Positions 699 through 59,526 of a stretch of DNA of 64,000 bases are shown piece after piece (within the stretch, counting starts at the first letter, position 1; every line of letters begins with the position of its first letter). The translations under genes were made by a program, and so were the position numbers. The stretch spans positions 124,001 to 188,000 of the IMG/VR virus record IMGVR_UViG_3300013233_000093; one strand, given 5' to 3'. Below the pieces are notes generated by a model. That model saw only the letters and a list, made by a program, of their open reading frames with translations, ran no database searches and was not told the origin of the DNA.

Positions 699-751
699 TA
701 CACCCACAGGCTTTACGGCCTGTGGGTGTATGCCGTCTTTTCTTTTCTTTT
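699..751 (+). terminator. Hairpin + TATGCCGT + U-tract
   Basis: tacacccacaggc-tttacg-gcctgtgggtgta, TATGCCGT at 729-736, T-rich 738-751. Confidence 0.85.
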
Positions 752-761
752 CCCTGTGTTG

Positions 762-840
762 ACCGTTTATTCAAAACTATATCACTATTATGATAGATAA
801 CGTGTTGTTGTCTTTACTTTAACCAAAGAGAAATAGAATT
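762..840 (+). promoter_or_regulatory. Early promoter cassette copy 1 (promoter + 5' hairpin + RBS)
   Basis: TATTCAAAACTATATCACTATTATGA at 768-793, then agataac-gtgtt-gttgtct hairpin and aaccaaagagaaatagaa leader; core resembles the phiKZ early motif TATATTAC. Confidence 0.85.
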
Positions 841-1413
841 ATGAGTAATTCCACCCAGTCACCTTCCGTCGGTAACCACGTAACCGATATTAAGACAATT
901 AAGATTCGACTGTCCAACGAGGGCGTGATCGAAAACACATGGTCAGATGTGATGAACCGCAAGGTAAGTCTGCCCGAGCCGTCTGATGCACGCCCGTTCT
1001 TAGGAGATAAGCGGGTGTTCGCCCCGCCCGTGTCGTATAGCGACGAACACCGCGTTACATCACAAGCCATCGCCATCATCGATGACTCGGATCAACTGTC
1101 CACAATTTCCAGCGACCCGGTGCATAATAGTGGGACTTTGATCTACGCGCTAGTTCCGTGGTGGATGGCAGGTCATCGGATCACAGACGACCAAGGTCTT
1201 GTCACCTATACAGCAGCAGACGTAATCAATACACTCACCCTACCACGCCTTGGGGAAATTGTAAAACGTTTTGGCGTGGATGTAATTGTAGTCGGGAAGT
1301 ATACATTCCTAACGCAGTCGGACTACGTTCACGACGGCAGTACGATTTGTCGCACAATCGGTGAAGACGGTAACCCTCATGGCGTGTTCTACGTGGCAAC
1401 GCGCGACCTTTAA
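841..1413 (+). CDS. Hypothetical early protein
   Basis: 190-aa ORF bracketed by its own promoter cassette and terminator. Confidence 0.8.
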   Translation: MSNSTQSPSVGNHVTDIKTIKIRLSNEGVIENTWSDVMNRKVSLPEPSDARPFLGDKRVFAPPVSYSDEHRVTSQAIAIIDDSDQLSTISSDPVHNSGTLIYALVPWWMAGHRITDDQGLVTYTAADVINTLTLPRLGEIVKRFGVDVIVVGKYTFLTQSDYVHDGSTICRTIGEDGNPHGVFYVATRDL

Positions 1414-1435
1414 TTAGAAGAGGCGTTTAATTAAC

Positions 1436-1483
1436 AGCCATCTCCCTCTAGAGGGAGATGGCTTACCATGTCTTTTTTATTTT
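1436..1483 (+). terminator. Hairpin terminator
   Basis: agccatctccctc-ta-gagggagatggct followed by catgtc and a T-tract. Confidence 0.8.
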
Positions 1484-1516
1484 CACCGTTTATTCAAAAC
1501 TATATCACTATTATGA
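1484..1516 (+). promoter_or_regulatory. Early promoter copy 2
   Basis: caccgtt + TATTCAAAACTATATCACTATTATGA (1491-1516), upstream of the operon containing the nvRNAP subunit. Confidence 0.85.
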
Positions 1517-1542
1517 ATGATTAATCAATTGGGATTCTTTTA

Positions 1543-3003
1543 ATGATAAACAGAACTGCGAAATACACCTATGGTGAGATGGACGGTACTGACTATAAGA
1601 GAGAGTTGAGAAACACCACAGACCATGCACTGCGCGTTGTAGATGCAAGTGGGCGTACTCAGATACTATCTCCTATAGCCAGGACTCAGTTCGGTAAAAG
1701 TGACGGTTACTTTACCGTGAAGGAAAAACTGTTAGGCAGGGATGCCGGTTCTTATTTAGACATCCCTAAGTTAGACCCGCCTACTGGCGCGGAAACGTGG
1801 ATTGAGATCAAAACGGCGGTGGACGCCTGTACGGTCCTGCAGTCCACTAATGGCATGTATATCGAAGAAGTGGGTTTACATGTATCCACGGTAGACAGTC
1901 GTTCTAGAACCACACATCCGCGCTTTAGTGCGAATCCGTTTAAACAACTAAAGGACAAGCGCGGTGCAGGACTCTCGTTAGAGCTGCTGGATCCGAACTG
2001 TCAGTACGCCACCTACTACGCTAATGTGGGCGGTGTGGTATTTACAGTGATTCCACAGCGTTCACCGGTACCTTCTGAAGATTGCTTACGGCTTACGCGA
2101 TGGGACGGGCGCTCAGGCGACGCAGTCACCACCAAGACAGACGTCATGAAGGCGTTAACCGGTGAGGGCGAGCATGGGATACGGTTATACCAAACCAGTA
2201 TAGACGCCAAGGCGGATGTTAGAAATCCATTGGTCACGGGCAAGGTAAGCGAGTTAGAAACATCCATTGCTAAATCTCGCACCGATAACGAGAAGTTACG
2301 AGAGCTTATTGCTAAGAACAAAGCCAATGCAGAACAGCTTCGCGTAGAAGCAGCCGAGCGAATGGTGAAGTACGAGCAACGCGCTGGACGAGAAAAGGCA
2401 GAAGCGATCGCGGCACGTGAAACAGAGGCACGTAAACACGAAGCACTGATTGCCACAATGCAACACAAGGCATCGTTAGCCGAGTCACGCAGTGTGGAGG
2501 CGGCACGTGTGGCGTCAGAACGCGCTAAGCAGGACGAGGTCAAACGAGTCGAAGCCGTAGCTGCATTAGCAGAGGCGAAACGTGTGGCGGCCGACAAGGC
2601 CAGGCAGGATGAAGTAAAGAGAGCCGAAGCCGTAGCTGCGTTAGCAGAAGCCAAGGCAGAACATCAACGTCGCCATGAGGCGGCCATCAAGAAAGCAGAG
2701 GTGGATTATGAAGCACGATTGGCAAGAGTGACCGCTGAACAAAAACGTGAGGCGAAAGAGGCGCGTGAGAAGTTCGAGAAAGAGCGTGCAGAGATAATTG
2801 CAGCGGAAGTTGCAGAGCAGGTAAACGCAGTAAAAGACAGAGCCCGACGTGAGTTGGAAGCAGAACGCGCGAAACGCCATCGCGCCGAAGAGACCCTTAA
2901 AACCACAGCCCACGCGGTCAAGAAAGAACAGTGGGCCGTGGTTAAGGTTGCCTTAGGCGTGGTAGCAGCAGCATTCGCACTATGGAAAACGTTTGCCACG
3001 TAA
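1543..3003 (+). CDS. Coiled-coil protein with C-terminal hydrophobic anchor
   Basis: 486 aa; long A/E/K/R-rich coiled coil with a duplicated QDEVKRxEAVAALAEAK; hydrophobic C-terminus; lies between MCP and nvRNAP genes. Confidence 0.8.
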   Translation: MINRTAKYTYGEMDGTDYKRELRNTTDHALRVVDASGRTQILSPIARTQFGKSDGYFTVKEKLLGRDAGSYLDIPKLDPPTGAETWIEIKTAVDACTVLQSTNGMYIEEVGLHVSTVDSRSRTTHPRFSANPFKQLKDKRGAGLSLELLDPNCQYATYYANVGGVVFTVIPQRSPVPSEDCLRLTRWDGRSGDAVTTKTDVMKALTGEGEHGIRLYQTSIDAKADVRNPLVTGKVSELETSIAKSRTDNEKLRELIAKNKANAEQLRVEAAERMVKYEQRAGREKAEAIAARETEARKHEALIATMQHKASLAESRSVEAARVASERAKQDEVKRVEAVAALAEAKRVAADKARQDEVKRAEAVAALAEAKAEHQRRHEAAIKKAEVDYEARLARVTAEQKREAKEAREKFEKERAEIIAAEVAEQVNAVKDRARRELEAERAKRHRAEETLKTTAHAVKKEQWAVVKVALGVVAAAFALWKTFAT

Positions 3004-3063: not shown

Positions 3064-4647
3064 ATGTTACAATCCGGTTTTATGCAGAGATTAAGGGCAA
3101 CCAAGCCTGTGCTAAATCCTCGTTTATGCGAGGGGTTGGCGCATCATCAATCTCAGACTTATGAGGGGTACATCGACGCCGTGATGAGGGCGGCATCGTC
3201 AGCATGGCCTGAGGCCATAAAGTACATCGGTGCGCGTCGTGCCACCCCTTTGGAGCAACTAGCGGAAGCTTGCCGGGTAAAACGTAGAAAGCGTAACTTT
3301 GAAGTCGCACGCAGCGACTTGTATTTAATGGTGTACGAGTTGGAGTTACATGGTGAGAAACTGAAGCCTCGATTTATGCTGTTGCCCTACATTCGACGTG
3401 GGTCACTTATGCGCATTCGGGCAGCGACGTATCAGATATCACCAGTGGCAGCAGATAACATTCTAACCGTTGGGTTGGATAAGATCTACATGCCAGTAAC
3501 ACGCTCCAAGTTATACTTCCATAAAGTACACGTGCGGTTCAAGGCCAACGGCAAGTTGGTCTCGATGGATACAGTGCATTCGCTTGTCTACAATGTAGAC
3601 AAAAACACACGAAATACGAAGAGACATTCGTTATTAGTGCATTACATTCTTTGCAAAGCAGGCTTAATTGGAGGCCTGAAACGATACTTAGGTATTGATG
3701 TGGTTGTTGGCCACGCAGAGATAAATGAAACAACCTACCCAACAGACAAATGGGTGATATGTGAATCAACAGGCATTGCCCCTAAAGGCATGCGAGATTA
3801 CTATCCTTCAACCCTACGGATTGCTCTGCGTAAAGAAGACGCTACTACGACGAAGCTGAGTATCATCGGCGGGATCTTTTACATAGCGGATCACGAGCCA
3901 GCATTGGTTCTTGCAGAGGAATCTGAGAACATCGCCATGTGGCGAAGGTTGTTGCCACGCTTCATTATGAAGACAGTGGACTCAGAGAAGAAAGCAGCCG
4001 AAAAGATGGAACAGCATTTTGAATCGCTGAACCACTATATGGATGAGCTAGTAAAACAAAGACTTCAACGAGAGGGCATCGCGTGTGATGACATCTATGA
4101 CGTTTTTGCTGATATGTTAACCACTTTCGAAGCTCGGACCTCTTTCGCCTCACCGGCCAATTTGGGAGATAAGCATCTAGAGACCACACGGTTCGTTTTA
4201 TACGACCTGGTAGCTACGATCTTTCAAACAACATTTGCACTCGCTAAGCTCTCTGGGGAGAGGCTTAACAAAAAGAAGGTGGAACAAACACTTGATGGCA
4301 AGTTTCGGTCAGATGCGATCGAACGGCTTTACAAAGCTCATGGGGAAGTCGAGTCAGTAAGTACTCCGACAGACCTCATGGTAACTTCTACAACACGCAA
4401 CCTGGTGCTCCAACACCGGACAACAACTCGCAGCGGCAGCAAGAACGCCGAGATGAGTGATCGTGCGTATGCGTTGCATGCGTCACAAGGACCCGTATGT
4501 GGCTTTGGTCAAATTACCAAATCACAGCCATCTGGCAGGGGATCGATTAACCATTTCTTACCTCTAAGTGAACGTGACGAAGTTGTAATCTTACCCGAGT
4601 TTACAAAAGAGTTAGAAGATCTTGAGAAAAGCATTGGAGTGGAATAA
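3064..4647 (+). CDS. Non-virion RNA polymerase beta subunit, N-terminal part (phiKZ gp123-like)
   Basis: 527 aa; RSDLYL, LLPY..RG, and C-terminal H.SQ...KSQPSGRGSIN motifs; position downstream of MCP. Confidence 0.75.
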   Translation: MLQSGFMQRLRATKPVLNPRLCEGLAHHQSQTYEGYIDAVMRAASSAWPEAIKYIGARRATPLEQLAEACRVKRRKRNFEVARSDLYLMVYELELHGEKLKPRFMLLPYIRRGSLMRIRAATYQISPVAADNILTVGLDKIYMPVTRSKLYFHKVHVRFKANGKLVSMDTVHSLVYNVDKNTRNTKRHSLLVHYILCKAGLIGGLKRYLGIDVVVGHAEINETTYPTDKWVICESTGIAPKGMRDYYPSTLRIALRKEDATTTKLSIIGGIFYIADHEPALVLAEESENIAMWRRLLPRFIMKTVDSEKKAAEKMEQHFESLNHYMDELVKQRLQREGIACDDIYDVFADMLTTFEARTSFASPANLGDKHLETTRFVLYDLVATIFQTTFALAKLSGERLNKKKVEQTLDGKFRSDAIERLYKAHGEVESVSTPTDLMVTSTTRNLVLQHRTTTRSGSKNAEMSDRAYALHASQGPVCGFGQITKSQPSGRGSINHFLPLSERDEVVILPEFTKELEDLEKSIGVE

Positions 4648-6558: not shown

Positions 6559-6620
6559 ACAGCATAGTACCCAACCACGCCATTACGGCGTGGTTGGTCT
6601 ATGTCCCTTTTTTTTATTTT
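6559..6620. terminator. Bidirectional terminator between convergent genes
   Basis: ccaaccacgcc-attac-ggcgtggttgg; followed by TATGTCCC+T on + and TATGCTGT on -. Confidence 0.85.
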
Positions 6621-16601: not shown

Positions 16602-16641
16602 ATAGTAGCCGGGTAATCCGGCTACTATCCTTTTATGCCGT
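16602..16641 (+). terminator. Hairpin + TATGCCGT
   Basis: atagtagccgg-gtaat-ccggctactat, TATGCCGT at 16634-16641. Confidence 0.8.
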
Positions 16642-21800: not shown

Positions 21801-21832
21801 AGCACCGTCCATTATGGACGGTGCTATGCTGT
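21801..21832 (+). terminator. Hairpin + TATGCTGT, no U-tract
   Basis: agcaccgtcca-tta-tggacggtgct with TATGCTGT at 21825-21832. Confidence 0.7.
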
Positions 21833-30931: not shown

Positions 30932-30971
30932 AAAATAGGCTACTGTTTATACAGCAGCTTATTTTTTTTTT
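30932..30971 (+). terminator. Canonical intrinsic terminator
   Basis: aataggctactgt-ttat-acagcagcttatt followed by a T-run. Confidence 0.75.
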
Positions 30972-31050
30972 AACCACGCAGTAACCTATGGACGCCGCGG
31001 GTGAAATCGTATGTATCCATAGCACATCAAACAACTTAGAGGGTTCTAAG

Positions 31051-34911: not shown

Positions 34912-34956
34912 CTACCCACTGGCATTGCCAGTGGGTAGTATGCAGGTTTTATTTTT
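34912..34956 (+). terminator. Hairpin + TATGCAGG + T-tract
   Basis: ctacccactggc-att-gccagtgggtag. Confidence 0.8.
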
Positions 34957-35001
34957 ACCATCGCCACTGTACTATGAACCTATTATAGAAGGATTAATAA
35001 A

Positions 35002-40672: not shown

Positions 40673-40710
40673 AGGGAGTCCTCGATGGAGGACGCCTTTT
40701 TCTTTTTTAT
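40673..40710 (+). terminator. Canonical intrinsic terminator
   Basis: gtcctc-gatg-gaggac followed by T-rich sequence. Confidence 0.7.
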
Positions 40711-40755
40711 TATATCGAACAGTATTACTTGACTATAACTACGAGAGCTTATAAC

Positions 40756-42916: not shown

Positions 42917-42918
42917 CT

Positions 42919-42955
42919 ATAATGACTGCTGCTTGTGTGGCGGTCATTATGCTGT
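42919..42955 (+). terminator. Hairpin + TATGCTGT, no U-tract
   Basis: ataatgactgctgc-ttgt-gtggcggtcattat with TATGCTGT at 42948-42955. Confidence 0.7.
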
Positions 42956-44493: not shown

Positions 44494-44550
44494 ACAGCAT
44501 ATACTGCATGGCTATGTGCCATGCAGTATATGTATCTTTTTTTATTTTTT
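44494..44550. terminator. Bidirectional terminator
   Basis: catatactgcatggc-tatgt-gccatgcagtatatg; T-tract on +, TATGCTGT on -. Confidence 0.85.
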
Positions 44551-44787
44551 ATTGTAAAGCCATTTATACAACACCGCTTTGAAGTCACTGTCTAATAGTA
44601 ACGAATCGTGATGCTTGCCCTTTAATGGCGCAGACAGTCCGTTATAATCAAGACCGCGCAGCCATCGTTCTCGTATCGTAGCTATGCTCAACACGCCATA
44701 CGATTCCAGGTGTATCTGGTTAGGCGTGGTGTATTTACCATCATTGTCTTTTATCTTGCTGTGTATGCTAAACGAAGTGCGTCTCAT
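44542..44787 (-). CDS. Small protein, possible DNA-binding module
   Basis: 81 aa; AGGA RBS; SIATIRERWLRG..L.AP resembles DNA-binding tails of HNH endonucleases. Confidence 0.5.
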   Translation of the reverse strand: MRRTSFSIHSKIKDNDGKYTTPNQIHLESYGVLSIATIRERWLRGLDYNGLSAPLKGKHHDSLLLDSDFKAVLYKWLYNKK

Positions 44788-49534: not shown

Positions 49535-49954
49535 ATGTACACCGACGAAAGCTTAGAAGATAGGGCTGCGTTTCTACACAACTTTACACAGGCGTATGTA
49601 ATGGGAATGGCTATTTATACGACATTTTATTACATCATATCAGGATCTGCAATGGCATTGCTCCCGCTTGCTTGCTTAACTGCACCAAGCTTTGTCGTAA
49701 TATGGTGGAAGGCGGAGGTGCGGCGACAGCCGCTTATTACGGATGGGTATAAAAAACGTGTGAGTATTGCAAGAAGTATATTCGACATTAGCTTACATTG
49801 CGTGTTAGCGTACTACGCGATCGCAGCGGTGCGTGCAGGATTTACGCCAGAGTCGTTTACGCACGTGGTTATAATGGCGTTAACTTACACTGTGGCTGCA
49901 GGGGCGTCTGAGATATCGCTGCCGGGCGACGACTTGACGTCTACGCCGAAATAA
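49535..49954 (+). CDS. 4-TM membrane protein
   Basis: Start set at ATG 49535 (GAGGA RBS). Confidence 0.75.
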   Translation: MYTDESLEDRAAFLHNFTQAYVMGMAIYTTFYYIISGSAMALLPLACLTAPSFVVIWWKAEVRRQPLITDGYKKRVSIARSIFDISLHCVLAYYAIAAVRAGFTPESFTHVVIMALTYTVAAGASEISLPGDDLTSTPK

Positions 49955-50013
49955 AGGTTTGCGGTAACTAAGCAAGTAATGTCACATGCTTATCATTAAT
50001 GAGGAATGGTGTT

Positions 50014-50439
50014 ATGAGTAAAACAGATCCATTACGAGGCTATACCGGACTTGGGTTTCAGGACGTTATTTGGTTCGCGTATACCGTGTACACGGTAAAT
50101 ACAATGACGACTGATATACCCATAATAATGTCGTGGGCGTTTGCCACTGCATTAACTGGATGGGTTTTTGGCTTGCACTACAGCACAGCTGCATACACGA
50201 GTCGGATTAACCTTCACGCCGCGCGTCAGGCAACGGATAGGAATATGGCGATGACTGTAAAGGCGTGCGTCATAACACACGCCATATTTTTACTGTCTGC
50301 ATTGGCGACCTCCGTACTCGTTATCGGATACGCAGACGACATTAACAAAATGCATATCGGTTACCTAATCGTATCAGGTATTTACATGCTACTTAACGCA
50401 CTCTTTGCCGTGCTAATCATGGGGGACGTTAAGCGATGA
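50014..50439 (+). CDS. 4-TM membrane protein
   Basis: Start set at ATG 50014 (GAGGA RBS). Confidence 0.75.
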   Translation: MSKTDPLRGYTGLGFQDVIWFAYTVYTVNTMTTDIPIIMSWAFATALTGWVFGLHYSTAAYTSRINLHAARQATDRNMAMTVKACVITHAIFLLSALATSVLVIGYADDINKMHIGYLIVSGIYMLLNALFAVLIMGDVKR

Positions 50440-50867
50440 ATAAACCATTTGCGGTGATTGCCAAGTTCGTGTTTATTTGGATGATCTTGACGTGGTTTAC
50501 CCATGAGACTGTCGTGCCCATAGTAAAGGCGGGTTTAGAAGTGAGTGGGGATCAGCTGCTCGTGTTTGGATTTATGTTAGTCTACATGACCATAGCGTAT
50601 ATTCTAACACACCGCTGCAGCACACTCGTCTATTTAATGGAAGACCGTCCGTGTGTTGATGTACGTAAATCCTTGATTAGAACTATGTCAGTGGATGTGA
50701 TTGTACAAGTGTTGTTTATAGTAACTGCGTGGTACCTGCTTCCGTCTACACCTGTAGAAGTATTGTTACTTACTTGTGGTCTACTTATCGTGTACGTATC
50801 AGTGCTTTACATTAACATACGCCGCATGGACAAAGCTAGGGTGTCGTTGCAAGGAGACGTCAAATAA
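50436..50867 (+). CDS. 4-TM membrane protein
   Basis: ATGA overlap; four hydrophobic helices. Confidence 0.8.
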   Translation: MNKPFAVIAKFVFIWMILTWFTHETVVPIVKAGLEVSGDQLLVFGFMLVYMTIAYILTHRCSTLVYLMEDRPCVDVRKSLIRTMSVDVIVQVLFIVTAWYLLPSTPVEVLLLTCGLLIVYVSVLYINIRRMDKARVSLQGDVK

Positions 50868-50868
50868 A

Positions 50869-51345
50869 ATGGATACACCAGGTATGGTGGTGATAGAATG
50901 TGAGTCAGTGGTGCTGGATGCTATGACAGGACTGTCATTTGGCATAATGTGCATGGCAATGGCTAACTACCTATTCGTGGGTAGCTGGCACCTGACGTTC
51001 CTTTTAGTAGTCGGGGTACTGATAAGTAATTACCGGCTACGTGGCGTCTTATCTCGATACCGTTGTTTGTTACAGCAAGATTATACATCAAGCATGGACT
51101 ACATGACAAGCAACGTTGTGTCATCCACCTCTTCAATTGCACTGCTGTTCATACTGTTTAGCGTGGCCACTGCGTACACAGCAGTGCATACAGTCATGTG
51201 GCCTGCGTTACTCATTACTTATATAGTGACTGCATTACTATACTGGAAGGTCAACAACGCACTGAGTTATTACACACTCTCGGTGAATCACCACAGATCC
51301 CAGTTTATACGTAATACAGTCACGGGTAGGTACGAACGTGTGTAA
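50869..51345 (+). CDS. 4-TM membrane protein
   Basis: Start set at ATG 50869 (AAGGAG RBS). Confidence 0.75.
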   Translation: MDTPGMVVIECESVVLDAMTGLSFGIMCMAMANYLFVGSWHLTFLLVVGVLISNYRLRGVLSRYRCLLQQDYTSSMDYMTSNVVSSTSSIALLFILFSVATAYTAVHTVMWPALLITYIVTALLYWKVNNALSYYTLSVNHHRSQFIRNTVTGRYERV

Positions 51346-51369
51346 TTTGCGTTCGTCTGTATGATAACG

Positions 51370-51406
51370 CTATATTACCTTAGTGAGGCATGCGACCTTG
51401 CATGTT
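51370..51406 (+). promoter_or_regulatory. Early promoter variant
   Basis: cTATATTACcttagtga followed by hairpin gcatgc-gacctt-gcatgt. Confidence 0.6.
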
Positions 51407-51447
51407 GTAACCATAGGTGCCATAACCTACAAAGATAGGTATGGTAA

Positions 51448-51630
51448 GTGAAGAGTATGAAATTAGATGTAGAGTCTCTACTGATCGCCGTTGTGGCGGT
51501 CGTTGTTCTTGTCGGGTGTTTTGCACCTGACGCTTCCACAGGTCGTACTTATAAAGAGTACGGCCCTTCTGAAACAGAAGCGGCGCAGTTGCGTCGCGAT
51601 TATGGGCCTGCGAGGCCCAAAGGATATTAA
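51448..51630 (+). CDS. Small putative lipoprotein
   Basis: Hydrophobic stretch ending in the lipobox LVGC. Confidence 0.65.
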   Translation: MKSMKLDVESLLIAVVAVVVLVGCFAPDASTGRTYKEYGPSETEAAQLRRDYGPARPKGY

Positions 51631-51632
51631 AA

Positions 51633-52442
51633 ATGTTTGTTGCCCGTAACTACAACGCCAAGGCTAGCATTAGCCTTGGCGTATTAACCAGTGAGGGGGA
51701 TGTGTCTGTTGCACTGTCCCCCTCACTGAGAGGAGTGGAACACGGCTACGCAGTGATCGCCACTCTGCGGGGAGGTGCCATGAAAGCACTAGCCCCAGCT
51801 GGCCGTGTGCTGGAAGCCTGCACAGGTTTCCAGGTATTTACCAGAGATGGTAAATACCTTGTTCTAGGCACTGCTGTCGGTGACGACAGTGCTTATATCC
51901 GTCTCTTCAACCGCTATGGTAAAAACATAGCGGCCGTGTTCGAGGCGGGAGACGTAGATTCTTTTACGTTCTCCTCCTCATTTCTGGAGTCCATTATTAA
52001 TGGACTCTTGGTGGCCTCTGGGAATTTTCCCAGAGAGTCACAGTGGGGGCGCAAGTCCTTCTCTTCCAAGACCAGCGATGGCTTGGATCCATGCATGCCC
52101 AAACTGGGCACCCAGAGCACCCAGGCGGGTACAATGCAGGTAAACGGTGATATGAAGAATATCACCATCGACATCACCACCCGTGAGGGGAAAGTGATGG
52201 CGTTGAAAGCGCTTAAGAAGCACACCCGCACCGCCTACAGTGTGTCCGACGATCTGTCCATGGTAGTATGTGCACAGCAAAACGCTGCGGGAGATCATTT
52301 CCGCAGTAAACTGTCAGTCTACACCTTCGGTGATGGAGAGTATCTCCACACCGCTACGGTGTGGCTGCCCGTCGATCACGACGGGGTTATGGGTCACACA
52401 GAAATGTGTGACCGGGTCGGCCACATGTTAAGAGGAGGCTAA
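51633..52442 (+). CDS. Hypothetical protein, probable paralogue of 47385-48176
   Basis: Shared motifs with 47385; FTRDGKYLVLG blade-like motif. Confidence 0.7.
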   Translation: MFVARNYNAKASISLGVLTSEGDVSVALSPSLRGVEHGYAVIATLRGGAMKALAPAGRVLEACTGFQVFTRDGKYLVLGTAVGDDSAYIRLFNRYGKNIAAVFEAGDVDSFTFSSSFLESIINGLLVASGNFPRESQWGRKSFSSKTSDGLDPCMPKLGTQSTQAGTMQVNGDMKNITIDITTREGKVMALKALKKHTRTAYSVSDDLSMVVCAQQNAAGDHFRSKLSVYTFGDGEYLHTATVWLPVDHDGVMGHTEMCDRVGHMLRGG

Positions 52443-52460
52443 ATATTGATGTTGGTTAGA

Positions 52461-52513
52461 TAGGTTGACGTTACATACGTCAACCTAGCCTATGTCTTTA
52501 TTTTTTATTTTTT
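52461..52513 (+). terminator. Hairpin + TATGTC + T-tract
   Basis: taggttgacgt-tacat-acgtcaaccta. Confidence 0.8.
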
Positions 52514-53596
52514 ATGAGTACATACTTACAAGGCATCATAGACGGGGAACCTGCGAAGTTCTTTACGTCTGCATCTAAAAACGGTGACTGTGTTGTAACC
52601 TACGATAACACAAGTGTCGGCGTATTGCACACTAAGTGCATCGTAAATTCCAGTTGGACTGCGTTACCTGATGTCACTGTCCCGACCGTTACGGGTGATA
52701 AGTTCAGTGGGCTGTTTGCAATAAGCGGAGACGGGCAGCGACTATTCACTGCGGGATACGCCGCGACAGGCACTGTAAACATTTACGTGCGTCAGAGAAT
52801 CACGGCAGGTTGGGCATCTCCAATAAGCGTAATAACCACGGTTACTGCGTATGATTTACACACACAGCTTATTGTTTCTTATGACGGATCGTTAGTCGTT
52901 ATCAACAGCATAGACAATCTGACAAAGGCGTCTGAGTTCTATCTGTTTAAAGCCACTACGGCATGGCCTGCGATACCACACGTTATCACAGCAGATAGGA
53001 TAAGTTGTAGTAACGATGGCACCCGTGTCGTCTGTGGCACTGCATGCGGGTTAACTGCTCGAGGTAAGGCAGACTTGCTTTACTACGATAATGGAACATG
53101 GCTTCCTCCTGTAAGTCTCGATGCCAAGCTCACTGGGCGATCGTCCACGCGGGACGGTTTAGTGACGATATCAGGGGACGGACTCACTGTGGTGTGCGCT
53201 GCGCTGTTAAACCCACCCAGGGGATCCACAGTAGGGACTTATTCACTTGTGCGATATCAACTGGCTGAAATCGGGAACGTCGCTTACGCGGGCGTTATAG
53301 GCGCCAGAACGGGATGCGGTATACAAGAGCTACCAGCAATCATCCAGAACATTGTGATCTGCACTCGCGGGGAGAACGTCCTTGTGTATGGAGTAGATGC
53401 TGCAGGCGGGATGGTCTCTGATCTGTACACGATGAAAGACGCGTTATGGCGGGTGATAAAAGCACCTGCTACCGTGGAACTTATTACCCTGCAATCTGTA
53501 TCTGCACCCAGAGCTTACGTATGCAATAACGCCGATGCGTACATGATTACCTATGCCACACCGAATGGTGTAGAACGATCCAGTATACTAAAGTGA
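52514..53596 (+). CDS. Beta-propeller protein (divergent FG-GAP-like)
   Basis: ISGDGQRLF, VSYDGSLVV, CSNDGTRVV, ISGDGLTVV blades. Confidence 0.8.
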   Translation: MSTYLQGIIDGEPAKFFTSASKNGDCVVTYDNTSVGVLHTKCIVNSSWTALPDVTVPTVTGDKFSGLFAISGDGQRLFTAGYAATGTVNIYVRQRITAGWASPISVITTVTAYDLHTQLIVSYDGSLVVINSIDNLTKASEFYLFKATTAWPAIPHVITADRISCSNDGTRVVCGTACGLTARGKADLLYYDNGTWLPPVSLDAKLTGRSSTRDGLVTISGDGLTVVCAALLNPPRGSTVGTYSLVRYQLAEIGNVAYAGVIGARTGCGIQELPAIIQNIVICTRGENVLVYGVDAAGGMVSDLYTMKDALWRVIKAPATVELITLQSVSAPRAYVCNNADAYMITYATPNGVERSSILK

Positions 53597-53607
53597 GGTA
53601 AATAAGA

Positions 53608-54759
53608 ATGAGTATCTTTTATAAGCACCAAGTGTTTGAAGGTAATGCTGAAGTACAGGACATGGCCGTCTCCACCGACGGCACAATGTTGGTGATTGGT
53701 CGACCTGACCTGTCCAGTGTATCCATTTATGAGAAACTGGCTACTGTACCGACCTTTGATGTCCCTGTATCATTAGACATGCCTGAAAGAAGAAACTTCG
53801 GCTATGCAGTGGCGCTATCAGGTGATCTTAATACCATTGCAGTGGGTTACTCAGAAATAGCCGTAGAGGACACCTACATGGCTCCTGAGTTCACCCACGT
53901 GGTTATGTTTATCCGCAATGATCTCGGCAACTGGATTGAAGACGGTGAGGTATCGGTAGGCTTAAACGGAGTAACTCCCGATACGATACGACTGTCGTTC
54001 GACGGACTTACGTTAACCGTGGGCGGCAGTGACCTTGTGTATACACTTATAAAGGATCCCGTGAACGGCGATGTGTTGGATACGGAAGATCTTCCGCTTA
54101 CCGCTCAGTTGTTTGAGCGATCGTTGGCTGATCCTTGGCATGCCGTAAAGGCGGTGCGGGCAGGCAACATAGACGGGCTACAGCAAGCGTTTGGCGGGAA
54201 TGCGTGGACAGTGAATAACGTCGCTGGTGCAGTGGATGAGATGATGGTCTCTACTGAATGGCGTCATGGACCTGTGGCAGGCTGTCGTATGTACAGAGTA
54301 ACGAAGAAAGCCGGTATTTGGACCGCGCCGGTTTTGGATGTATCCGCTATGGGCAGCGACATTGTTATGTCAGACGACATGACTGTAATGATCGTGTCTG
54401 TCACGTCTAACGTGCCACAGGCCGGTTTGTTTCATATGTACGCACGCACTCCAGGCGGTGCGTGGAGTGTGCCTACCGTGATCCTAAAGCCTCCTCTGGC
54501 AGATGACCTGTTGTTTGCCCTTAACCTAGGAATGAGTTCTGATGGATTATGGCAGTCCGCTACAGCAAGGCATTACGATGCGCCATCAGGTAACGTATAC
54601 GTATATAAAGCAGGTGTGTATAACGGACGCATTGTAACCGGAGATGTCACGCGGACTTCGTTTGGTAAAATTACCAGATTGCCCTCATTACCACAGCCCG
54701 TAGTCTACGTGTCGGACGGTTCTAATGTAAACCAGTATACTACTGTATTACCATTATAA
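53608..54759 (+). CDS. Beta-propeller protein (FG-GAP-like)
   Basis: VSTDGTMLVIG, FGYAVALSGDLNTIAVG, LSFDGLTLTVG, MSSDGLW. Confidence 0.8.
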   Translation: MSIFYKHQVFEGNAEVQDMAVSTDGTMLVIGRPDLSSVSIYEKLATVPTFDVPVSLDMPERRNFGYAVALSGDLNTIAVGYSEIAVEDTYMAPEFTHVVMFIRNDLGNWIEDGEVSVGLNGVTPDTIRLSFDGLTLTVGGSDLVYTLIKDPVNGDVLDTEDLPLTAQLFERSLADPWHAVKAVRAGNIDGLQQAFGGNAWTVNNVAGAVDEMMVSTEWRHGPVAGCRMYRVTKKAGIWTAPVLDVSAMGSDIVMSDDMTVMIVSVTSNVPQAGLFHMYARTPGGAWSVPTVILKPPLADDLLFALNLGMSSDGLWQSATARHYDAPSGNVYVYKAGVYNGRIVTGDVTRTSFGKITRLPSLPQPVVYVSDGSNVNQYTTVLPL

Positions 54760-54780
54760 CAATATAAAATCGGAGAGAAG

Positions 54781-55896
54781 ATGACTTACGCAGACAACGT
54801 CCGCAAATGCATAGACATGGACATGAGCGCAGACGGACGCAGTTGCGTTACGCTGGACAGAGTGATGGATAATAAAGACGCCATCGGTACCCTACATCAC
54901 CACACTTTGTTGGGCGGTGAATGGCACAACACCCGTACCTTTCAAATACCCACGTTGTTCAAGACATCTGTGTCGTATGAAACGGTACAGGCCGTGTGTA
55001 TATCAGGAGACGGTAACGTAATGGCTGTGACGACCAATTTCAGTTATCGTGTATACGTCAAATCCTTATACGACGGCAACATTTGGATGCCTGTTATAAC
55101 GCACTCTTATCGATACGATAAGATCGCCACGACACGAGGCGCCAGACCTACGCTAAGTTATACGGGCAACAAGCTTATGCTTTCCCCGATAGGACATACT
55201 CCTAAACGATGTAGGTTAAAACTGGTATACCTCACGGCTAAGTTTGATTACAACCAAGTAGGTAAGTATAATGACTTATCCATAAACCCCACGTTTTACT
55301 GGGATGTAACTAACGTGGCCGTGAGTGAGATAAGTACGAGTTACATCGTCGGGATTATCACAGAAGCCACTGTACGTCAGGCGCGACATAAGGGCAATGG
55401 CGTGTTGCGTGTAGAGGACATCACAGGTCACCTGCAGAAAAAGATCCGTGATGTACGTCTGTACGGACTGTATGTGGAACCACGCAACATTTGCCATCAT
55501 CAAGATGAACGTGAAATGGCGTACATCAATGGCTTAGAAGGTGCGTTACACGTACTGCCATATGACACACAGAAGCAAGTCATCGTGACAGACATGCCGG
55601 ACAATACTGTCGCCACAGGCACGGTGTCTTCCAGCTTAGACGGTGATATCATCGCAGTGAGTGTGTGCAGATCCGGTACATACGGTTTACTCATATTTAA
55701 ACGACGCGGTAGGGTATACGATGTGGCAAGGTTTGTGGATACCAATTCCAACGACGCCATTAACCCGATCGCTGTCTATAAGGTAAGTCCTTGTGGTAAT
55801 CACTTGGACTACAGCGTCCCCACTAAAATAGACCCTGCTACAGGGGAACGTGGGGACTGGACACGCTTACAACTTAACATTGTTGAAAAGGATTAA
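54781..55896 (+). CDS. Beta-propeller protein (divergent)
   Basis: MSADGRSCV, ISGDGNVMAV, LSYTGNKL, SLDGDIIAV, VSPCGNHL. Confidence 0.8.
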   Translation: MTYADNVRKCIDMDMSADGRSCVTLDRVMDNKDAIGTLHHHTLLGGEWHNTRTFQIPTLFKTSVSYETVQAVCISGDGNVMAVTTNFSYRVYVKSLYDGNIWMPVITHSYRYDKIATTRGARPTLSYTGNKLMLSPIGHTPKRCRLKLVYLTAKFDYNQVGKYNDLSINPTFYWDVTNVAVSEISTSYIVGIITEATVRQARHKGNGVLRVEDITGHLQKKIRDVRLYGLYVEPRNICHHQDEREMAYINGLEGALHVLPYDTQKQVIVTDMPDNTVATGTVSSSLDGDIIAVSVCRSGTYGLLIFKRRGRVYDVARFVDTNSNDAINPIAVYKVSPCGNHLDYSVPTKIDPATGERGDWTRLQLNIVEKD

Positions 55897-55898
55897 AC

Positions 55899-56891
55899 AT
55901 GCATACAGAATCAATTCGCATTACCGAGTTAGCTGAGTTCGCAAGTGATACGTTCAGCAGTAATGCAATGGATTTATCCAGTGACGGTAAAACCGTGGTG
56001 ACGATTACACCCGACCAGAAACACGCGGTTGTATTGGTTGTGATGAATAAGCACAGGCGTAAATGGTCTAAGGTCGCAGAAGTGACACTGCACGGATGTA
56101 ACTATGACGATGCCAGTGTAAGCATCAGTCCGGATGGATTGCGTGTTGCGGTGGGTCTACCTGGAGATGACGTTGTGTATGTCTATCGCTTATACGTGCA
56201 CGGCGTGAAACCACTTACATGCATATGTCGTCTACATCGTCCGAACTCCATGATCGTACACGGATTTGGTTGCGTCGTAGCCATTCGATTGGTTAACGAA
56301 AAGTATCGTTTGTTTACGACTGCGTACTGCATGCAAATGCATGCGTATGAATTCGATGATAAAGATGCCGCTAAGTGCGTTCGTACTGGGACGCTGCAAG
56401 CACCTATGACACCTAACGCGTACTACGACATCTTTGCCAATCATGACGGGTCACGTGTCACAGTTATAACAGGATCTACTGCTACCGTGATGACCGGCGA
56501 ATTGATGACATTGGAGATGATTGCGTTACCATCGACTGTGGATCGTGCGTGTGCAGCAGACAGTGACGTGGCCGTGGTCTCTTCTGGAGATAACCTGTAT
56601 CATACACGCTATAATGCAGAGAGCAAGGAGGCCAAGGAGGTGCTAGACGATCCACTGGCCATCAGTGTGGATGTGTCTGCCAACTACGATGGCACGGTCT
56701 TAATAAACGCCATGCGCAGTAAGATGGTGGTGTACGATTATAAAGCCGATCTCGTCACCCATGTGGGGTTGTTACGCCCAGATGTGAACGGGATGACGGG
56801 TAGATGTACTATGGCAGGTGCATCACGTGCATGTGCTGGCATGCATCAGTTACGTGCTGGCGGAAGTGTGTTATCAATAGCGGAATGGTGA
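55899..56891 (+). CDS. Beta-propeller protein (divergent)
   Basis: LSSDGKTVV, ISPDGLRVAVG, ANHDGSRV, ANYDGTVL. Confidence 0.8.
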   Translation: MHTESIRITELAEFASDTFSSNAMDLSSDGKTVVTITPDQKHAVVLVVMNKHRRKWSKVAEVTLHGCNYDDASVSISPDGLRVAVGLPGDDVVYVYRLYVHGVKPLTCICRLHRPNSMIVHGFGCVVAIRLVNEKYRLFTTAYCMQMHAYEFDDKDAAKCVRTGTLQAPMTPNAYYDIFANHDGSRVTVITGSTATVMTGELMTLEMIALPSTVDRACAADSDVAVVSSGDNLYHTRYNAESKEAKEVLDDPLAISVDVSANYDGTVLINAMRSKMVVYDYKADLVTHVGLLRPDVNGMTGRCTMAGASRACAGMHQLRAGGSVLSIAEW

Positions 56892-56892
56892 T

Positions 56893-57810
56893 ATGGATTC
56901 TCAAGTAAGACGCAAGTCCCTTGCTGTGGTGGCGATGAACAAAAAGTTATCGTCTAACATCATCGAGTGCTCCCCCGTAGAACAGATCCGTCTTATGGAC
57001 GGTGAGTTAGACGTGGGCACGGAAGATGTGGTCAGCAGTGGGATCGACCGGGATAACAATGTATACACTGCCAGTATAAAGATGGGTGTGACTGTGGAGG
57101 CGGAATGGTGGCCTGAGACCAACCGTCCCACACCGCCTGACGTCCGCCGTGGAGAGACTGTATGGCTATGGCATACCGGAGACAGTAATAAGTTTTACTG
57201 GGAGTCTACGGGAGCCTATGACGACCTCAGACGTCTAGAGACCATCGTCTTTCGCTTATCTGGATTACCCGATAACGCAGATGAGAAGTTAGATGCCAGT
57301 AATACGTACTGGATAGAATGGTCTACTCATAAGAAGATGGTGACGTTACATACTTCTATGCGTAACGGTGAGAAGGCAGGTTACACATTACAACTTAACA
57401 CGGGTGATGGTCAGGCTACGCTGGAGGATAATGAAGGTAATATAGTTCAGTTGGATACAGCAGCCACACACATCTGGGCGCGTAACATAAAAGACAGCAT
57501 CTTTGAGTTACTTAAAGGTGATATACGCGCGTCCGTCCCAGGCGGGTCGGAGATCTTTATGAAGGACGGAGACATCCTTACTCATAACGGCCATGGCGTA
57601 GAGTTTAACATGGTAGGTGGAAACACAATCCACAAGATGCCAGGTAACTACATCATAAACGCGACGAACATGATCGTGAATGCAAAGACCATGCACAACA
57701 AACCTGTAATTGGCGGAAAGGCCACTTACGGTAAGATCAGTGTAGGAAGCATCTCTGGTGGTAAGGGGTCATTTGGCCTGTTGCTTGCTGGTAAGTTTAA
57801 CTATCCATAG
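56893..57810 (+). CDS. Baseplate central spike-like protein (OB fold + beta-helix)
   Basis: AEW...NR.TPPDVRRGE.V.L....D..KFYW and RRLET motifs of phiKZ-like spikes; repetitive beta C-terminus. Confidence 0.7.
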   Translation: MDSQVRRKSLAVVAMNKKLSSNIIECSPVEQIRLMDGELDVGTEDVVSSGIDRDNNVYTASIKMGVTVEAEWWPETNRPTPPDVRRGETVWLWHTGDSNKFYWESTGAYDDLRRLETIVFRLSGLPDNADEKLDASNTYWIEWSTHKKMVTLHTSMRNGEKAGYTLQLNTGDGQATLEDNEGNIVQLDTAATHIWARNIKDSIFELLKGDIRASVPGGSEIFMKDGDILTHNGHGVEFNMVGGNTIHKMPGNYIINATNMIVNAKTMHNKPVIGGKATYGKISVGSISGGKGSFGLLLAGKFNYP

Positions 57811-57854
57811 ACGGCATACACAGTACCGCATTGCGGTACTGTGTCTTATGCCGT
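57811..57854. terminator. Bidirectional hairpin with TATGCCGT on both strands
   Basis: acggcata / acacagtaccgca-t-tgcggtactgtgt / tatgccgt between convergent genes; no U-tract. Confidence 0.8.
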
Positions 57855-57862
57855 GTATTGTA

Positions 57863-58399
57863 CTACTGTGATATATGCGCCATCAGTTCTTCCAGCTCTT
57901 CCGGATGGTGTATGTTAAACACCGGGATCTTAGCATGATTGGCGACTCGCATCTCTAAGAAGGTGATTGTAGGACTGTACGCGACCACGAATTCAGAACG
58001 TGACTGTGCGCCTACTAACTCTTCATCTCCTAATACAGATAACGTTTTAGCTACTGACTTAAGACGATCTTCTTTAGACCCCCGTAGCAGATTACTGTCA
58101 AGCTTGTTGCTGTCCAAGTGTCGGACTACTTGATGTTCTTCTGTTGTGGTGGGCACCCAGCAATGTGCATTGTGTTGATTCTTGATTCGAGGCGCTGTCT
58201 TAGAATAACTCCATATCTCGTGACTGCCGTTGGCCATTAATGCGCCGTTGACAAACTCCTCTGCGACGCCTTCTGTGCCGTTATGTCTAAGAGTGTAACC
58301 CATCTTAGCCAACCGACTTGAAATGCCGTGTATGGCCTCTGTGATGTGCTTAGGGGCAGACGTCGCGCATCCTGCACCTGTATAGAATTTTTCACTCAT
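57863..58399 (-). CDS. SLOG/DprA-like protein with degenerate motifs
   Basis: FYTGAG...P, RLAKMGYTLR.NG..G..EEF..GA, A....IPVFN. Confidence 0.7.
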   Translation of the reverse strand: MSEKFYTGAGCATSAPKHITEAIHGISSRLAKMGYTLRHNGTEGVAEEFVNGALMANGSHEIWSYSKTAPRIKNQHNAHCWVPTTTEEHQVVRHLDSNKLDSNLLRGSKEDRLKSVAKTLSVLGDEELVGAQSRSEFVVAYSPTITFLEMRVANHAKIPVFNIHHPEELEELMAHISQ

Positions 58400-58468
58400 T
58401 TACTGCGTGCTCCATATGTGGATTTATTAGACATACGATACTTAACTGTGTTCGCTACTATCTACTAT

Positions 58469-58508
58469 CTATATTACTTTAGTGATACTTAGGTAATAAT
58501 ACTTAGGT
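58469..58508 (+). promoter_or_regulatory. Early promoter variant
   Basis: cTATATTACtttagtga tacttaggtaat (same leader start as copy 8). Confidence 0.7.
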
Positions 58509-58558
58509 GCACTGTTATAACTAATAGATCTCTTACTAGAGATCAAAGGATAAAGATT

Positions 58559-59428
58559 ATGTTTAAAATGATTAAAAGGTTGTTTGCCTGGATTAAGAAA
58601 CTTCCAGTAATTGTACAAATTATGGTATTGGTTGTAGCCCTGCCCCTGGCTGCCGCGGCAGCTGTGGCATATGCAGTAACAATTGCAATGGTTTTAGTTT
58701 GGACATGCACGGTTACACTCGCACAATTGTGTGCGAGTGTAACTGCCAAGGGACACCTCTACAGAGTAACCACACCAGACGGCATGGTCGGGTACATCGG
58801 AGGTACCGTCCACAGTATGGTGCAGGCGCCGATGAAGTATATCCGCGCCGTCCGCGCAACTGGTAATTTGCTGGTGGAATACCGGGGATGTTGGGTTAAG
58901 GAAAACGCTGTCGAAATTGCGGGGCTTAAGCAGAAGTTCTCTCCGGAGATTCCGGTCGAGCATTTGGTTGAAATGGAGGTAGAGAATGCTATTGCCCCTT
59001 TAACCCAGCTCCTGTTTGGCGGGTTGTTGACAATGGAGCGTACCCTTGAACGACATGCTGATAGCAAGTCGGCTGAGGTAGAGGACTTGCCTTCTATGGC
59101 CATGCACTTGGATAGCATCCAGTGCCTAACGCCGCTGTACGCGGCGCGTACAGCGGCCATCGGCGCGTTTGCGAGCACAGCGGCGTTTGTAAAGACGGCG
59201 TATGCCATTACGTACAAGGGCACAACGCCATTAGGCACCCATCTTTGTATGGGTGAGTCGTACGGCCTTAACAGCCGCAGCGCCATTCAGGCGCTGCGGC
59301 TGATGGACGAGCTGGATGCCGGCCGTCCAGCCACTTTGATGGTCGGCGTGCTCCACCTGTACGCAGGAGGCCCATTCGCCTGCCTTGAGGTCTTAAAAGA
59401 CAGAGGCTGCAAAATCGAACGCATGTAA
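58559..59428 (+). CDS. TraB/GumN (Tiki-like) family membrane protein
   Basis: N-terminal TM; LYRV...YIGGTVH; C-terminal MVGVLHL......L..LKDRG.KIER. Confidence 0.75.
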   Translation: MFKMIKRLFAWIKKLPVIVQIMVLVVALPLAAAAAVAYAVTIAMVLVWTCTVTLAQLCASVTAKGHLYRVTTPDGMVGYIGGTVHSMVQAPMKYIRAVRATGNLLVEYRGCWVKENAVEIAGLKQKFSPEIPVEHLVEMEVENAIAPLTQLLFGGLLTMERTLERHADSKSAEVEDLPSMAMHLDSIQCLTPLYAARTAAIGAFASTAAFVKTAYAITYKGTTPLGTHLCMGESYGLNSRSAIQALRLMDELDAGRPATLMVGVLHLYAGGPFACLEVLKDRGCKIERM

Positions 59429-59438
59429 GTGCGTTCGT

Positions 59439-59479
59439 AGATCTCCTCCGTTTAGGCGGGGGAGATCTTTTTTTTTTTT
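59439..59479 (+). terminator. Canonical intrinsic terminator
   Basis: agatctcctccg...cgggggagatct followed by a long T-run. Confidence 0.85.
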
Positions 59480-59485
59480 GCGTTT

Positions 59486-59526
59486 ACAGCATAGACTCCT
59501 ATACACAAGCGATCGCTTGTGTATAG
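59486..59526 (-). terminator. Hairpin + TATGCTGT (minus strand)
   Basis: ctatacacaagc-gatc-gcttgtgtatag; TATGCTGT on - (acagcata at 59486-59493). Confidence 0.75.

What the first reader, a model, noticed from the sequence alone, without database searches (positions are those of the whole stretch)
699..59526. A second terminator class: hairpin followed by TATGCYGT instead of a U-tract
Seen: nine exact TATGC(C/T)GT motifs at or within a few nt of the 3' base of a gene-end hairpin, always in the sense of the gene that ends there. They are at 729, 16634, 21825, 42948 and 57847 on +, and 6559, 44494, 57811 and 59486 on -. Near variants occur at 1467, 6600, 34939, 44529 and 52491. Several have no U-tract, and the convergent site at 57811 has the motif on both strands. 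Pure U-tract terminators lacking the motif (30932, 40673, 59439) end units that start at early promoters. At 59439-59526 the two classes sit back to back. Inference: a sequence-specific termination or processing signal for the non-virion RNAP, whose phiKZ late promoter consensus is also TATG.
Basis: partly seen in the sequence, partly recalled or inferred. Interest (0 to 1): 0.68.

Follow-up and report, generated by a model that had tools for sequence, protein, structure and literature searches.

The report
Jumbo-phage terminators with a TATGCYGT box
The hairpin-plus-TATGCYGT sites are real and far from chance, but they are this uncultivated phiKZ-like phage's version of a terminator motif already mapped in phiKZ and 201phi2-1; new here are its conservation across the whole phage family and its split from U-tract terminators.

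Summary
Observation confirmed. All nine exact TATGCYGT sites directly follow a strong gene-end hairpin. The other five exact matches in the window lie inside genes and equal the chance level. In the whole 222,906-bp genome, 22 of 36 exact matches sit at a hairpin 3' end (p about 1e-44), and TATG is the commonest 4-mer after gene-end hairpins.

The window belongs to a distant phiKZ-like (Chimalliviridae) phage, and window 3064-4647 is the ortholog of phiKZ gp123. The box matches the published phiKZ terminator motif (stem-loop plus YTTATKYYGT; Putzeys 2024) and 201phi2-1 "motif A". I found it in ten further relatives (GC 38-58%), after the major capsid gene in 11 of 12 phages, with unrelated stems.

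Eight published 201phi2-1 RNA 3' ends all fall inside the box, after the Y of TATGCY and before GT. So it marks ends, not starts. U-tract terminators follow early promoters and occur only on the + strand, which carries all 28 early promoters (21/62 versus 0/20).

Not shown: that the box is specific to the non-virion polymerase. The same box terminates in uninfected host cells. No RNA data exist for this phage. Verdict: new member of a known kind, moderate interest.

The parts
699..736 (+). Terminator after the major capsid gene (ORF end 683): hairpin 699-730, box 729-736, then a T-rich run and an early promoter
   Evidence: the orthologous capsid-gene terminator carries the box in 11 of 12 phages
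16602..16641 (+). Hairpin 16602-16628 plus box 16634-16641
21801..21832 (+). Hairpin 21801-21825 plus box 21825-21832, after gene 20533-21792; a ribosome-binding site and ATG follow 13 nt later
42918..42955 (+). Hairpin plus box 42948-42955 after gene 42284-42916; an early promoter follows at 42976
57811..57854 (.). Bidirectional terminator between convergent genes 56893-57810 (+) and 57863-58399 (-): one hairpin 57818-57844, box on + at 57847-57854 and on - at 57811-57818
6559..6620 (.). Bidirectional terminator at the convergent junction 6549/6614: hairpin 6571-6597, exact box on - (6559-6566), TATGTCCC plus T-run on + (6600-6620). It is orthologous to the phiKZ gp125/gp126 junction, which has the same layout
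44494..44555 (.). Bidirectional terminator: hairpin 44498-44532, exact box on - (44494-44501), TATG plus T-run on +
59486..59526 (-). Hairpin 59499-59526 plus box 59486-59493, ending the virion-protein gene 59544-60806 (-)
59439..59480 (+). Canonical U-tract terminator (hairpin plus 11 T) ending the unit that starts at the early-type promoter at 58470
30932..30975 (+). U-tract terminator without box; first hairpin after the early promoter at 29374
40674..40715 (+). U-tract terminator without box; first hairpin after the early promoter at 39953
34912..34960 (+). Mixed type: hairpin, TATGCAGG, then a T-run
52461..52510 (+). Mixed type: hairpin, TATGTCTT, then a T-run
1436..1485 (+). Hairpin plus CCATGTCT plus T-run (not TATG); effectively a U-tract terminator after the early unit that starts at 778
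3064..4647 (+). Gene for the ortholog of phiKZ gp123, the beta-like non-virion polymerase subunit whose pocket binds TATG in phiKZ
   Evidence: (synteny)

Best explanation
These are the phage's own version of the phiKZ-type transcription terminator. A stable RNA hairpin is followed, 0-5 nt later, by the word (T)TATGCYGT instead of a run of U.

By analogy with mapped ends in 201phi2-1, the transcript ends at the Y of TATGCY, 6-9 nt after the stem, and GT lies just beyond the RNA end. The proposed steps are inferred. The A/U-rich start of the box gives the weak hybrid next to the hairpin. The C-Y/G step stops the polymerase at the right distance, because pyrimidine at the RNA end with G as next base is the consensus pause signature of multisubunit polymerases. 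The hairpin then releases the RNA.

This type ends mainly non-early units, presumably transcribed by the non-virion polymerase, including both sides of convergent gene pairs. Classical U-tract terminators end the short units that start at early (virion-polymerase) promoters.
For: Shown here:
- Box-hairpin association.
- Logo of 42 sites: TATG, then C/T, C/T, G, T, then T-rich.
- Enrichment at convergent junctions: 24 of 37.
- Same box after hairpins in four uncultivated relatives (44-49% gp123 identity) and in phiKZ, Burkholderia FLC9, Xanthomonas Xoo-sp14, Klebsiella Eowyn, Ralstonia RSF1 and an Erwinia phage, GC 38-58%.
- Box after the capsid gene in 11 of 12 phages, with unrelated stems.
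- Eight published 201phi2-1 3' ends fall at one fixed position in the box.
- One phiKZ small RNA ends 7 nt after the stem.
- U-tract terminators: 14 of 28 first hairpins after early promoters against 7 of 57 others (p = 0.0003); 21 of 62 on the + strand against 0 of 20 on the - strand, with all 28 early promoters on +.

Literature:
- phiKZ terminator motif at mapped 3' ends (PMC10914365).
- 201phi2-1 motif A (PMC11512511).
- Pause consensus G-10 Y-1 G+1 (PMC6062546).
Against:
- The end position is carried over from a relative with about 30% protein identity.
- ONT-cappable-seq resolves ends only to 1-2 nt and cannot tell termination from processing.
- The spacing between stem and box varies, from overlap with the stem to 5 nt.
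- About a third of gene-end hairpins have neither a box nor a T-run.
- 7 of 28 first hairpins after early promoters have TATG without a T-run, so the class split is statistical, not absolute.
- Gene calls behind the context classes are my own crude ORF calls.
Confidence: 0.8

Rival explanations
1. The box is a dedicated stop word read by the non-virion polymerase itself. The pocket of the gp123-like beta subunit, which binds TATG in the non-template strand at late promoters, catches the same word during elongation, stalls the enzyme next to the hairpin and so causes release. The virion polymerase lacks this response and needs U-tracts.
For: - TATG is the phiKZ late-promoter word with G as the start.
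- The pocket lies in a core subunit, not a detachable factor.
- The window encodes the gp123 ortholog. Pocket residues F151, K158, H185, N186, H331, S334, Y406 and Q466 are kept or conservatively replaced.
- The box is conserved across GC 38-58%, including non-U positions.
- The class and strand split from U-tract terminators fits.
Against: - The mapped 201phi2-1 ends lie 2 nt beyond the G, whereas the promoter pocket holds TATG at -3 to +1.
- The same terminators work strongly in uninfected host cells.
- Early promoters here also carry TATG at the likely start, so TATG may not separate the two polymerases.
- Relatives have TAT(T)nGCC variants in which TATG is broken but GCC(G)T is kept.
- Pocket residues N398, Y399 and S402 are not conserved.
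Confidence: 0.25
2. Stop-restart element: the hairpin ends the upstream transcript, and the TATG directly after it is a late promoter start word that launches the next one.
For: - TATG with G as +1 defines phiKZ late promoters.
- A phiKZ small RNA starts within 1 nt of such a G.
- A TATG sits 22-35 nt before the gp119-like gene in this phage and four relatives.
- At some tandem sites the box lies 21-35 nt before a start codon with a ribosome-binding site, e.g. window 21825.
Against: - TATG is most frequent at convergent junctions, where no gene follows (24 of 37 against 17 of 43 tandem).
- The extension CYGT is absent from the gp119-type promoters.
- All eight mapped 201phi2-1 sites are 3' ends.
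- Exact boxes without a hairpin show no link to gene starts.
- This could still hold for a minority of tandem sites, as a second use of the same word.
Confidence: 0.15
3. RNA-level signal: longer primary transcripts are cut at TATGCY/GT, or the hairpin plus box is bound by a phage protein for 3'-end protection or export from the phage nucleus. The ends would then arise by processing, not termination.
For: - Sequence-specific conservation goes beyond what a weak hybrid needs.
- ONT-cappable-seq cannot tell processing from termination.
- These phages must export mRNA from a protein shell (general knowledge, not tested here).
Against: - GT lies beyond the mapped RNA end, so a protein binding the mature RNA could not read it.
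- The ends sit at the classical 7-9 nt distance from the stem.
- The elements reduce downstream expression in uninfected cells without phage proteins.
Confidence: 0.1
4. Ordinary intrinsic terminators whose tails merely look alike by chance or by composition.
For: ARNold classed most phiKZ motif sites as intrinsic terminators. Host polymerase stops at the 201phi2-1 sites.
Against: - The exact 8-mer follows 18 of 82 hairpins against 0.1 expected.
- The tail has only 3 U in 8, and the tool's U-tract scan misses these sites.
- The A, G, C and G positions are kept in phages from 38 to 58% GC.
Confidence: 0.03

Closest known systems
phiKZ conserved terminator motif (Putzeys et al. 2024, PMC10914365): GC-rich stem-loop followed by YTTATKYYGT, found at 61 ONT-cappable-seq 3' ends
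   Same: Hairpin followed by the same word: TATGCYGT fits TATKYYGT at every position. Same places, including the capsid gene end and the gp125/gp126-type convergent junction. Same phage family and gene order.
   Different: Here the stems are not the CCYCCCC/GGGRRGG type. That stem occurs in this genome only with U-tracts (window 59439; genome 98788 and 121819). The leading T is weaker, positions 5-6 are C-rich rather than T/C, and the tail is clearly not U-rich.
201phi2-1 terminator motif A (PMC11512511)
   Same: Same box. The eight 3' ends named in the paper map to TATGC[Y] before GT.
   Different: Those elements were tested only with host polymerase in a reporter. No temporal class split was reported.
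Canonical intrinsic (Rho-independent) terminator
   Same: Stable GC-rich hairpin. In the relatives, the RNA end lies 7-9 nt after the stem.
   Different: No U-tract: 3 U in 8 and conserved A, G, C, G. True U-tract terminators coexist in the same genome and are used differently.
phiKZ late promoter start word TATG, bound by the gp123 beta-lobe pocket (PMC4666361, PMC12809450)
   Same: The same four letters. The gp123 ortholog is encoded in the window and most pocket residues are kept.
   Different: The promoter word needs no hairpin and has no CYGT extension. The sites here mark ends and are commonest where no gene follows.
Consensus elemental pause G-10 Y-1 G+1 of multisubunit RNA polymerases (PMC6062546)
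   Same: With the end at Y, the next base is G, and a G of the stem lies near -10.
   Different: The pause consensus has TG at -3/-2, whereas the box has GC there. Pausing at these sites has not been measured.

Membership tests
phiKZ-type terminator (stem-loop plus YTTATKYYGT) | Stable stem-loop directly upstream of the word | tested here: met
   All nine window sites have hairpins of -15 to -25 kcal/mol
phiKZ-type terminator (stem-loop plus YTTATKYYGT) | 3' flank matching TTATKYYGT | tested here: met
   Logo of 42 sites: TATG, C/T, C/T, G, T; the T before TATG is only a preference
phiKZ-type terminator (stem-loop plus YTTATKYYGT) | Coincides with mapped RNA 3' ends | not testable with these tools
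The feature is met in 201phi2-1 (8 of 8) and in one phiKZ RNA
phiKZ-type terminator (stem-loop plus YTTATKYYGT) | Lies after gene ends, often bidirectional between convergent genes | tested here: met
phiKZ-type terminator (stem-loop plus YTTATKYYGT) | Host genome is a phiKZ-like phage with split multisubunit polymerases | tested here: met
   gp123 ortholog and DnaB/gp119/capsid/gp122/gp123 gene order
Canonical intrinsic terminator | U-tract (at least 5 U in 8) right after the stem | tested here: not met
   The box has 3 U in 8, and the tool scan misses the box sites
phiKZ late promoter | TATG followed by a gene in the same direction | tested here: not met
   Four of the nine window sites and 24 genome-wide face the 3' end of a convergent gene. 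It is met at some tandem sites
phiKZ late promoter | RNA 5' end at the G | not testable with these tools
   No RNA data for this phage
Consensus pause element G-10 Y-1 G+1 | Pyrimidine at the RNA 3' end and G as next base | tested here: inconclusive
   True for 7 of 8 mapped 201phi2-1 ends. For this phage it follows only by analogy

The most novel reading that the evidence does not exclude
In nucleus-forming jumbo phages one short word does double duty. TATG held in the beta-lobe pocket of the gp123-like core subunit sets the start at late promoters. The same word, placed after a hairpin and extended to TATGCY/GT, is a polymerase-specific stop signal. The phage would then run two separate termination codes: U-tracts for the injected virion polymerase, and the box for the non-virion polymerase.
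Probability: 0.2. Interest if true: 0.75.

Novelty: new member of a known kind. Interest (0 to 1): 0.45.

Why it matters
How the split, sigma-less polymerases of phiKZ-like phages stop transcribing has not been studied; I found no paper on it.

This genome shows the published phiKZ terminator word in a GC-richer setting, where it can no longer pass for a poor U-tract. The comparison shows it is kept across the family while the stems change freely. Two further points make a polymerase-specific termination code testable with existing enzymes: the ends fall before a conserved GT, and U-tract terminators are confined to early units.

In practice, the box plus hairpin is a good marker for annotating transcription units in uncultivated Chimalliviridae genomes, where standard terminator finders miss it.

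Tried and rejected
- Close relatives: megablast against the phage collection found nothing. The search for related loci with the single gp123 protein found none in IMG/VR. The nearest proteins share only 44-49% identity, so no nucleotide alignment of orthologous terminators and no formal covariation count was possible. I compared syntenic positions instead.
- Supplementary tables with all phiKZ and 201phi2-1 end coordinates are not held. Ceyssens 2014 is not held. I used only the coordinates printed in the main texts.
- Whole-genome count against the reversed word (36 against 39) shows no overall excess. The signal lies in where the matches sit, not in how many there are.
- Avoidance of the bare word inside genes: about 7 sense and 6 antisense, so no bias.
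- Rfam and tRNA scans of the window found nothing.
- Sigma-70-like promoters are below the shuffle expectation, so I did not pursue a host-polymerase reading of the early promoters.
- Vibrio phage BONAISHI shows little of the box (2 of 23 hairpins), so the motif is not universal in the family.
Full report
WHAT THE WINDOW IS
The window is bases 124,001-188,000 of a 222,906-bp virus record with terminal repeats and 47.8% GC. It has no near relative among sequenced phages. The protein from window 3064-4647 matches PHROG 2943 ("polymerase") and is about 30% identical to proteins of phiKZ-like jumbo phages, some of them annotated as a non-virion RNA polymerase beta subunit.

The gene order matches phiKZ gp118-gp128: DnaB-like helicase on the minus strand, a gp119-like gene, the major capsid gene, a gp122-like gene, this gene, then a convergent junction. 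Window 3064-4647 is therefore the ortholog of phiKZ gp123, and the ORF ending at 683 is the capsid gene. The nearest known proteins, from uncultivated contigs, share only 44-49% identity.

THE OBSERVATION
TATGCYGT occurs 14 times in the window against 5.7 expected; none of 100 shuffles reached 14. The nine listed sites each follow a hairpin of -15 to -25 kcal/mol, with the box starting between 4 nt inside the stem and 5 nt after it. Each has the sense of the gene that ends there. The other five matches lie inside genes without a hairpin, which is the chance level.

Genome-wide:
- 22 of 36 exact matches lie at the 3' end of one of 124 strong, mostly intergenic hairpins, a zone covering 0.36% of positions (p about 7e-45).
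- TATG is the commonest 4-mer at the 3' end of the 82 hairpins that follow a gene end: 36 against 4 expected.
- The exact 8-mer follows 18 of these 82 hairpins against 0.1 expected.
- The logo of 42 TATG-anchored sites reads TATG, C (28) or T (11), C (21) or T (13), G (26), T (31), followed by a T-rich stretch.

The variants at 6600, 34939, 44529 and 52491 are TATG boxes followed by T-runs. The one at 1467 is CCATG, not TATG. The tool's consensus terminator scan of 42000-61000 finds the two U-tract hairpins but none of the five exact-box sites there.

IT IS A KNOWN MOTIF
Putzeys et al. 2024 (PMC10914365) mapped phiKZ transcript ends by ONT-cappable-seq. They reported that 61 terminators share a stem-loop followed by YTTATKYYGT. 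The 201phi2-1 study (PMC11512511) found a motif A that "strongly resembles" it. TATGCYGT fits TATKYYGT at every position.

I checked this on sequence. In 50 kb of phiKZ, 17 of 40 strong hairpins are followed by TATG, mostly as TTATG-Y-Y-GT. These include the capsid gene terminator and the gp125/gp126 convergent junction. That junction has the same layout as window 6559-6620: a box on the minus strand, and TATGTC plus a T-run on the plus strand.

IT IS FAMILY-WIDE
The four uncultivated relatives carry the box at syntenic places, with completely different stems. Regions of 41 kb around the gp123 ortholog gave these counts of strong hairpins followed by TATG:
- Burkholderia phage FLC9: 12 of 53
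- Xanthomonas phage Xoo-sp14: 12 of 69
- Klebsiella phage Eowyn: 14 of 36
- Ralstonia phage RSF1: 8 of 63
- an Erwinia phage: 3 of 26
- Vibrio phage BONAISHI: only 2 of 23

Control words GTAT and CATA scored 0-2 in FLC9, Xoo-sp14, Eowyn and the Erwinia phage. GTAT matched TATG in RSF1 (8) and exceeded it in BONAISHI (3), so the hairpin-wide count is not an enrichment in those two. The consensus in the GC-rich phages is TATGCCGT. After the capsid gene, 11 of 12 phages have a hairpin followed by the box, and no two stems are alike. A short word kept at one place while proteins have drifted to 25-30% identity and GC ranges from 38 to 58% is under selection for its own sequence. I found no paper describing this wider conservation. 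Subscription journals are not covered.

ENDS, NOT STARTS
The 201phi2-1 paper prints eight 3'-end coordinates. Placed on the GenBank record, all eight lie on the plus strand, 8-9 nt after a GC-rich stem. Seven fall at the sixth letter of the box (TATGC[Y], then GT) and one at the fifth. One of the eight is the capsid gene terminator.

A phiKZ small RNA whose boundaries are given in the text starts 1 nt from the G of a TATG. It ends 7 nt after a stem, inside TTATATT.

In this genome, gene-end hairpins at convergent junctions, where nothing lies downstream to be transcribed, carry TATG more often (24 of 37) than tandem ones (17 of 43; p = 0.03). Both strands often carry it, as at 57811/57847.

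TWO CLASSES
The genome has a very well conserved promoter, ending in AAAACTATATCACTATTATGAT, in 23 copies, plus a TATATTAC variant in 5 copies. All are on the plus strand, and ten of them lie in the window. By its AT-rich form and copy number I take it for the early, virion-polymerase promoter; this is an inference.
- The first strong hairpin after such a promoter has a T-run in 14 of 28 cases, against 7 of 57 for all other gene-end hairpins (p = 0.0003).
- TATG without a T-run shows the opposite pattern: 7 of 28 against 31 of 57 (p = 0.01).
- Independently, T-run terminators make up 21 of 62 gene-end hairpins on the plus strand and 0 of 20 on the minus strand, where 15 of 20 are TATG-type (p = 0.002).

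This part of the finding is supported. As far as I could find, it has not been reported for phiKZ or 201phi2-1.

MECHANISM
Shown: the box sits where a U-tract would sit. In relatives the RNA ends after the Y, and the conserved GT lies beyond the RNA end.

Inferred: the A/U-rich first half gives a weak hybrid next to the hairpin. The Y/G step is a pause point, since pyrimidine at -1 and G at +1 are the consensus pause signature (PMC6062546). A G of the stem lies near -10 in the mapped examples. Because GT is not in the mature RNA, reading at the level of the transcribing complex is more likely than binding of the finished RNA.

[quoted passage not shown] In the window's ortholog, F151, K158, H185, N186, H331, S334, Y406 and Q466 are kept or conservatively replaced, whereas N398, Y399 and S402 are not.

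Several points count against the idea:
- The mapped ends lie 2 nt past the G, not at it.
- The eight 201phi2-1 terminators work well in uninfected host cells.
- The early promoters also carry TATG at the likely start.
- Relatives have variants in which extra T's split TAT from GCC.

I rate this reading at about one in four to one in five.

A stop-restart use, with the same TATG serving as a late start, may apply at a few tandem sites such as 21825, where a ribosome-binding site and ATG follow within 21 nt. It cannot explain the convergent sites.

LIMITS
There are no RNA data for this phage. Gene calls are my own longest-ORF calls, and a few small genes are on the wrong strand. Hairpin thresholds are arbitrary. 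The end position is borrowed from a distant relative, measured by a method with 1-2 nt resolution.

VERDICT
It belongs to a kind already described in phiKZ and 201phi2-1. New here are three things: the family-wide conservation of the exact word in GC-rich genomes, the fixed end position before GT, and the division of labour with U-tract terminators.

Noticed in passing
window 778, 1501, 17591, 29374, 33605, 35997, 39953, 42976 (plus variants at 44840 and 58470); 28 in the genome, all on the + strand: A highly conserved promoter-like block of about 45 nt, with core AAAACTATATCACTATTATGAT. It is often preceded by CTGTGTTGAC and followed by a conserved leader that can form a small hairpin (GGACAACGTGTTGTTGTC or ATAACGATCGTGTTATC). 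I take it for the early (virion polymerase) promoter. The leader hairpin is unexplained.
   Followed up: partly
genome 98455-98810 and 121452-121840 (just upstream of the window); window 58470-59480: Units starting at the TATATTAC-type promoter variant with an identical leader of about 35 nt. They are roughly 310-970 nt long. The two 310-340-nt units upstream of the window end in a double hairpin whose second stem is the phiKZ-like CCTCCCC/GGGGAGG type followed by a U-tract. The 970-nt window unit ends in a single stem of that type (59439-59468) followed by a U-tract. The short units seem to encode proteins of about 80 aa. In this phage the phiKZ-type stem goes with U-tracts, not with the box.
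   Followed up: partly
genome 66868, 68567, 91441 (+) and 201004 (-); outside the window: Four copies of one element: the same 11-bp stem (loop TTAA in three copies, GTAA in one), then TATGTCGTATATTAC, a ribosome-binding site and the start of paralogous genes (proteins beginning MDS.. or MDV..). A gene family seems to have been duplicated together with its terminator-promoter region. phiKZ has TTATGTCGTAT after several hairpins too.
   Followed up: no
genome 83449 (-) and 93053 (-); outside the window: Exact boxes on the antisense side of hairpins inside long + strand gene blocks, with a looser TATG on the sense side. They may be stops for antisense transcription.
   Followed up: no
window 42000-61000: Sigma-70-like promoter matches are fewer than in shuffles (20 against 30.7 +/- 6.0). 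This fits a phage that does not rely on host polymerase.
   Followed up: no
window 22174-24153 and 32096-33532: An NAD-dependent DNA ligase and a nicotinamide phosphoribosyltransferase are encoded in the window (PHROG matches at about 1e-130). They point to a phage-borne NAD supply and use module.
   Followed up: no
L010 567-598, 1222-1253, 3834-3865 (uncultivated relative): Three near-identical hairpins followed by TTTTGCCGT, a hybrid in which a short T-run replaces TATG but GCCGT is kept. This suggests that the GCYGT half of the box has its own role.
   Followed up: partly
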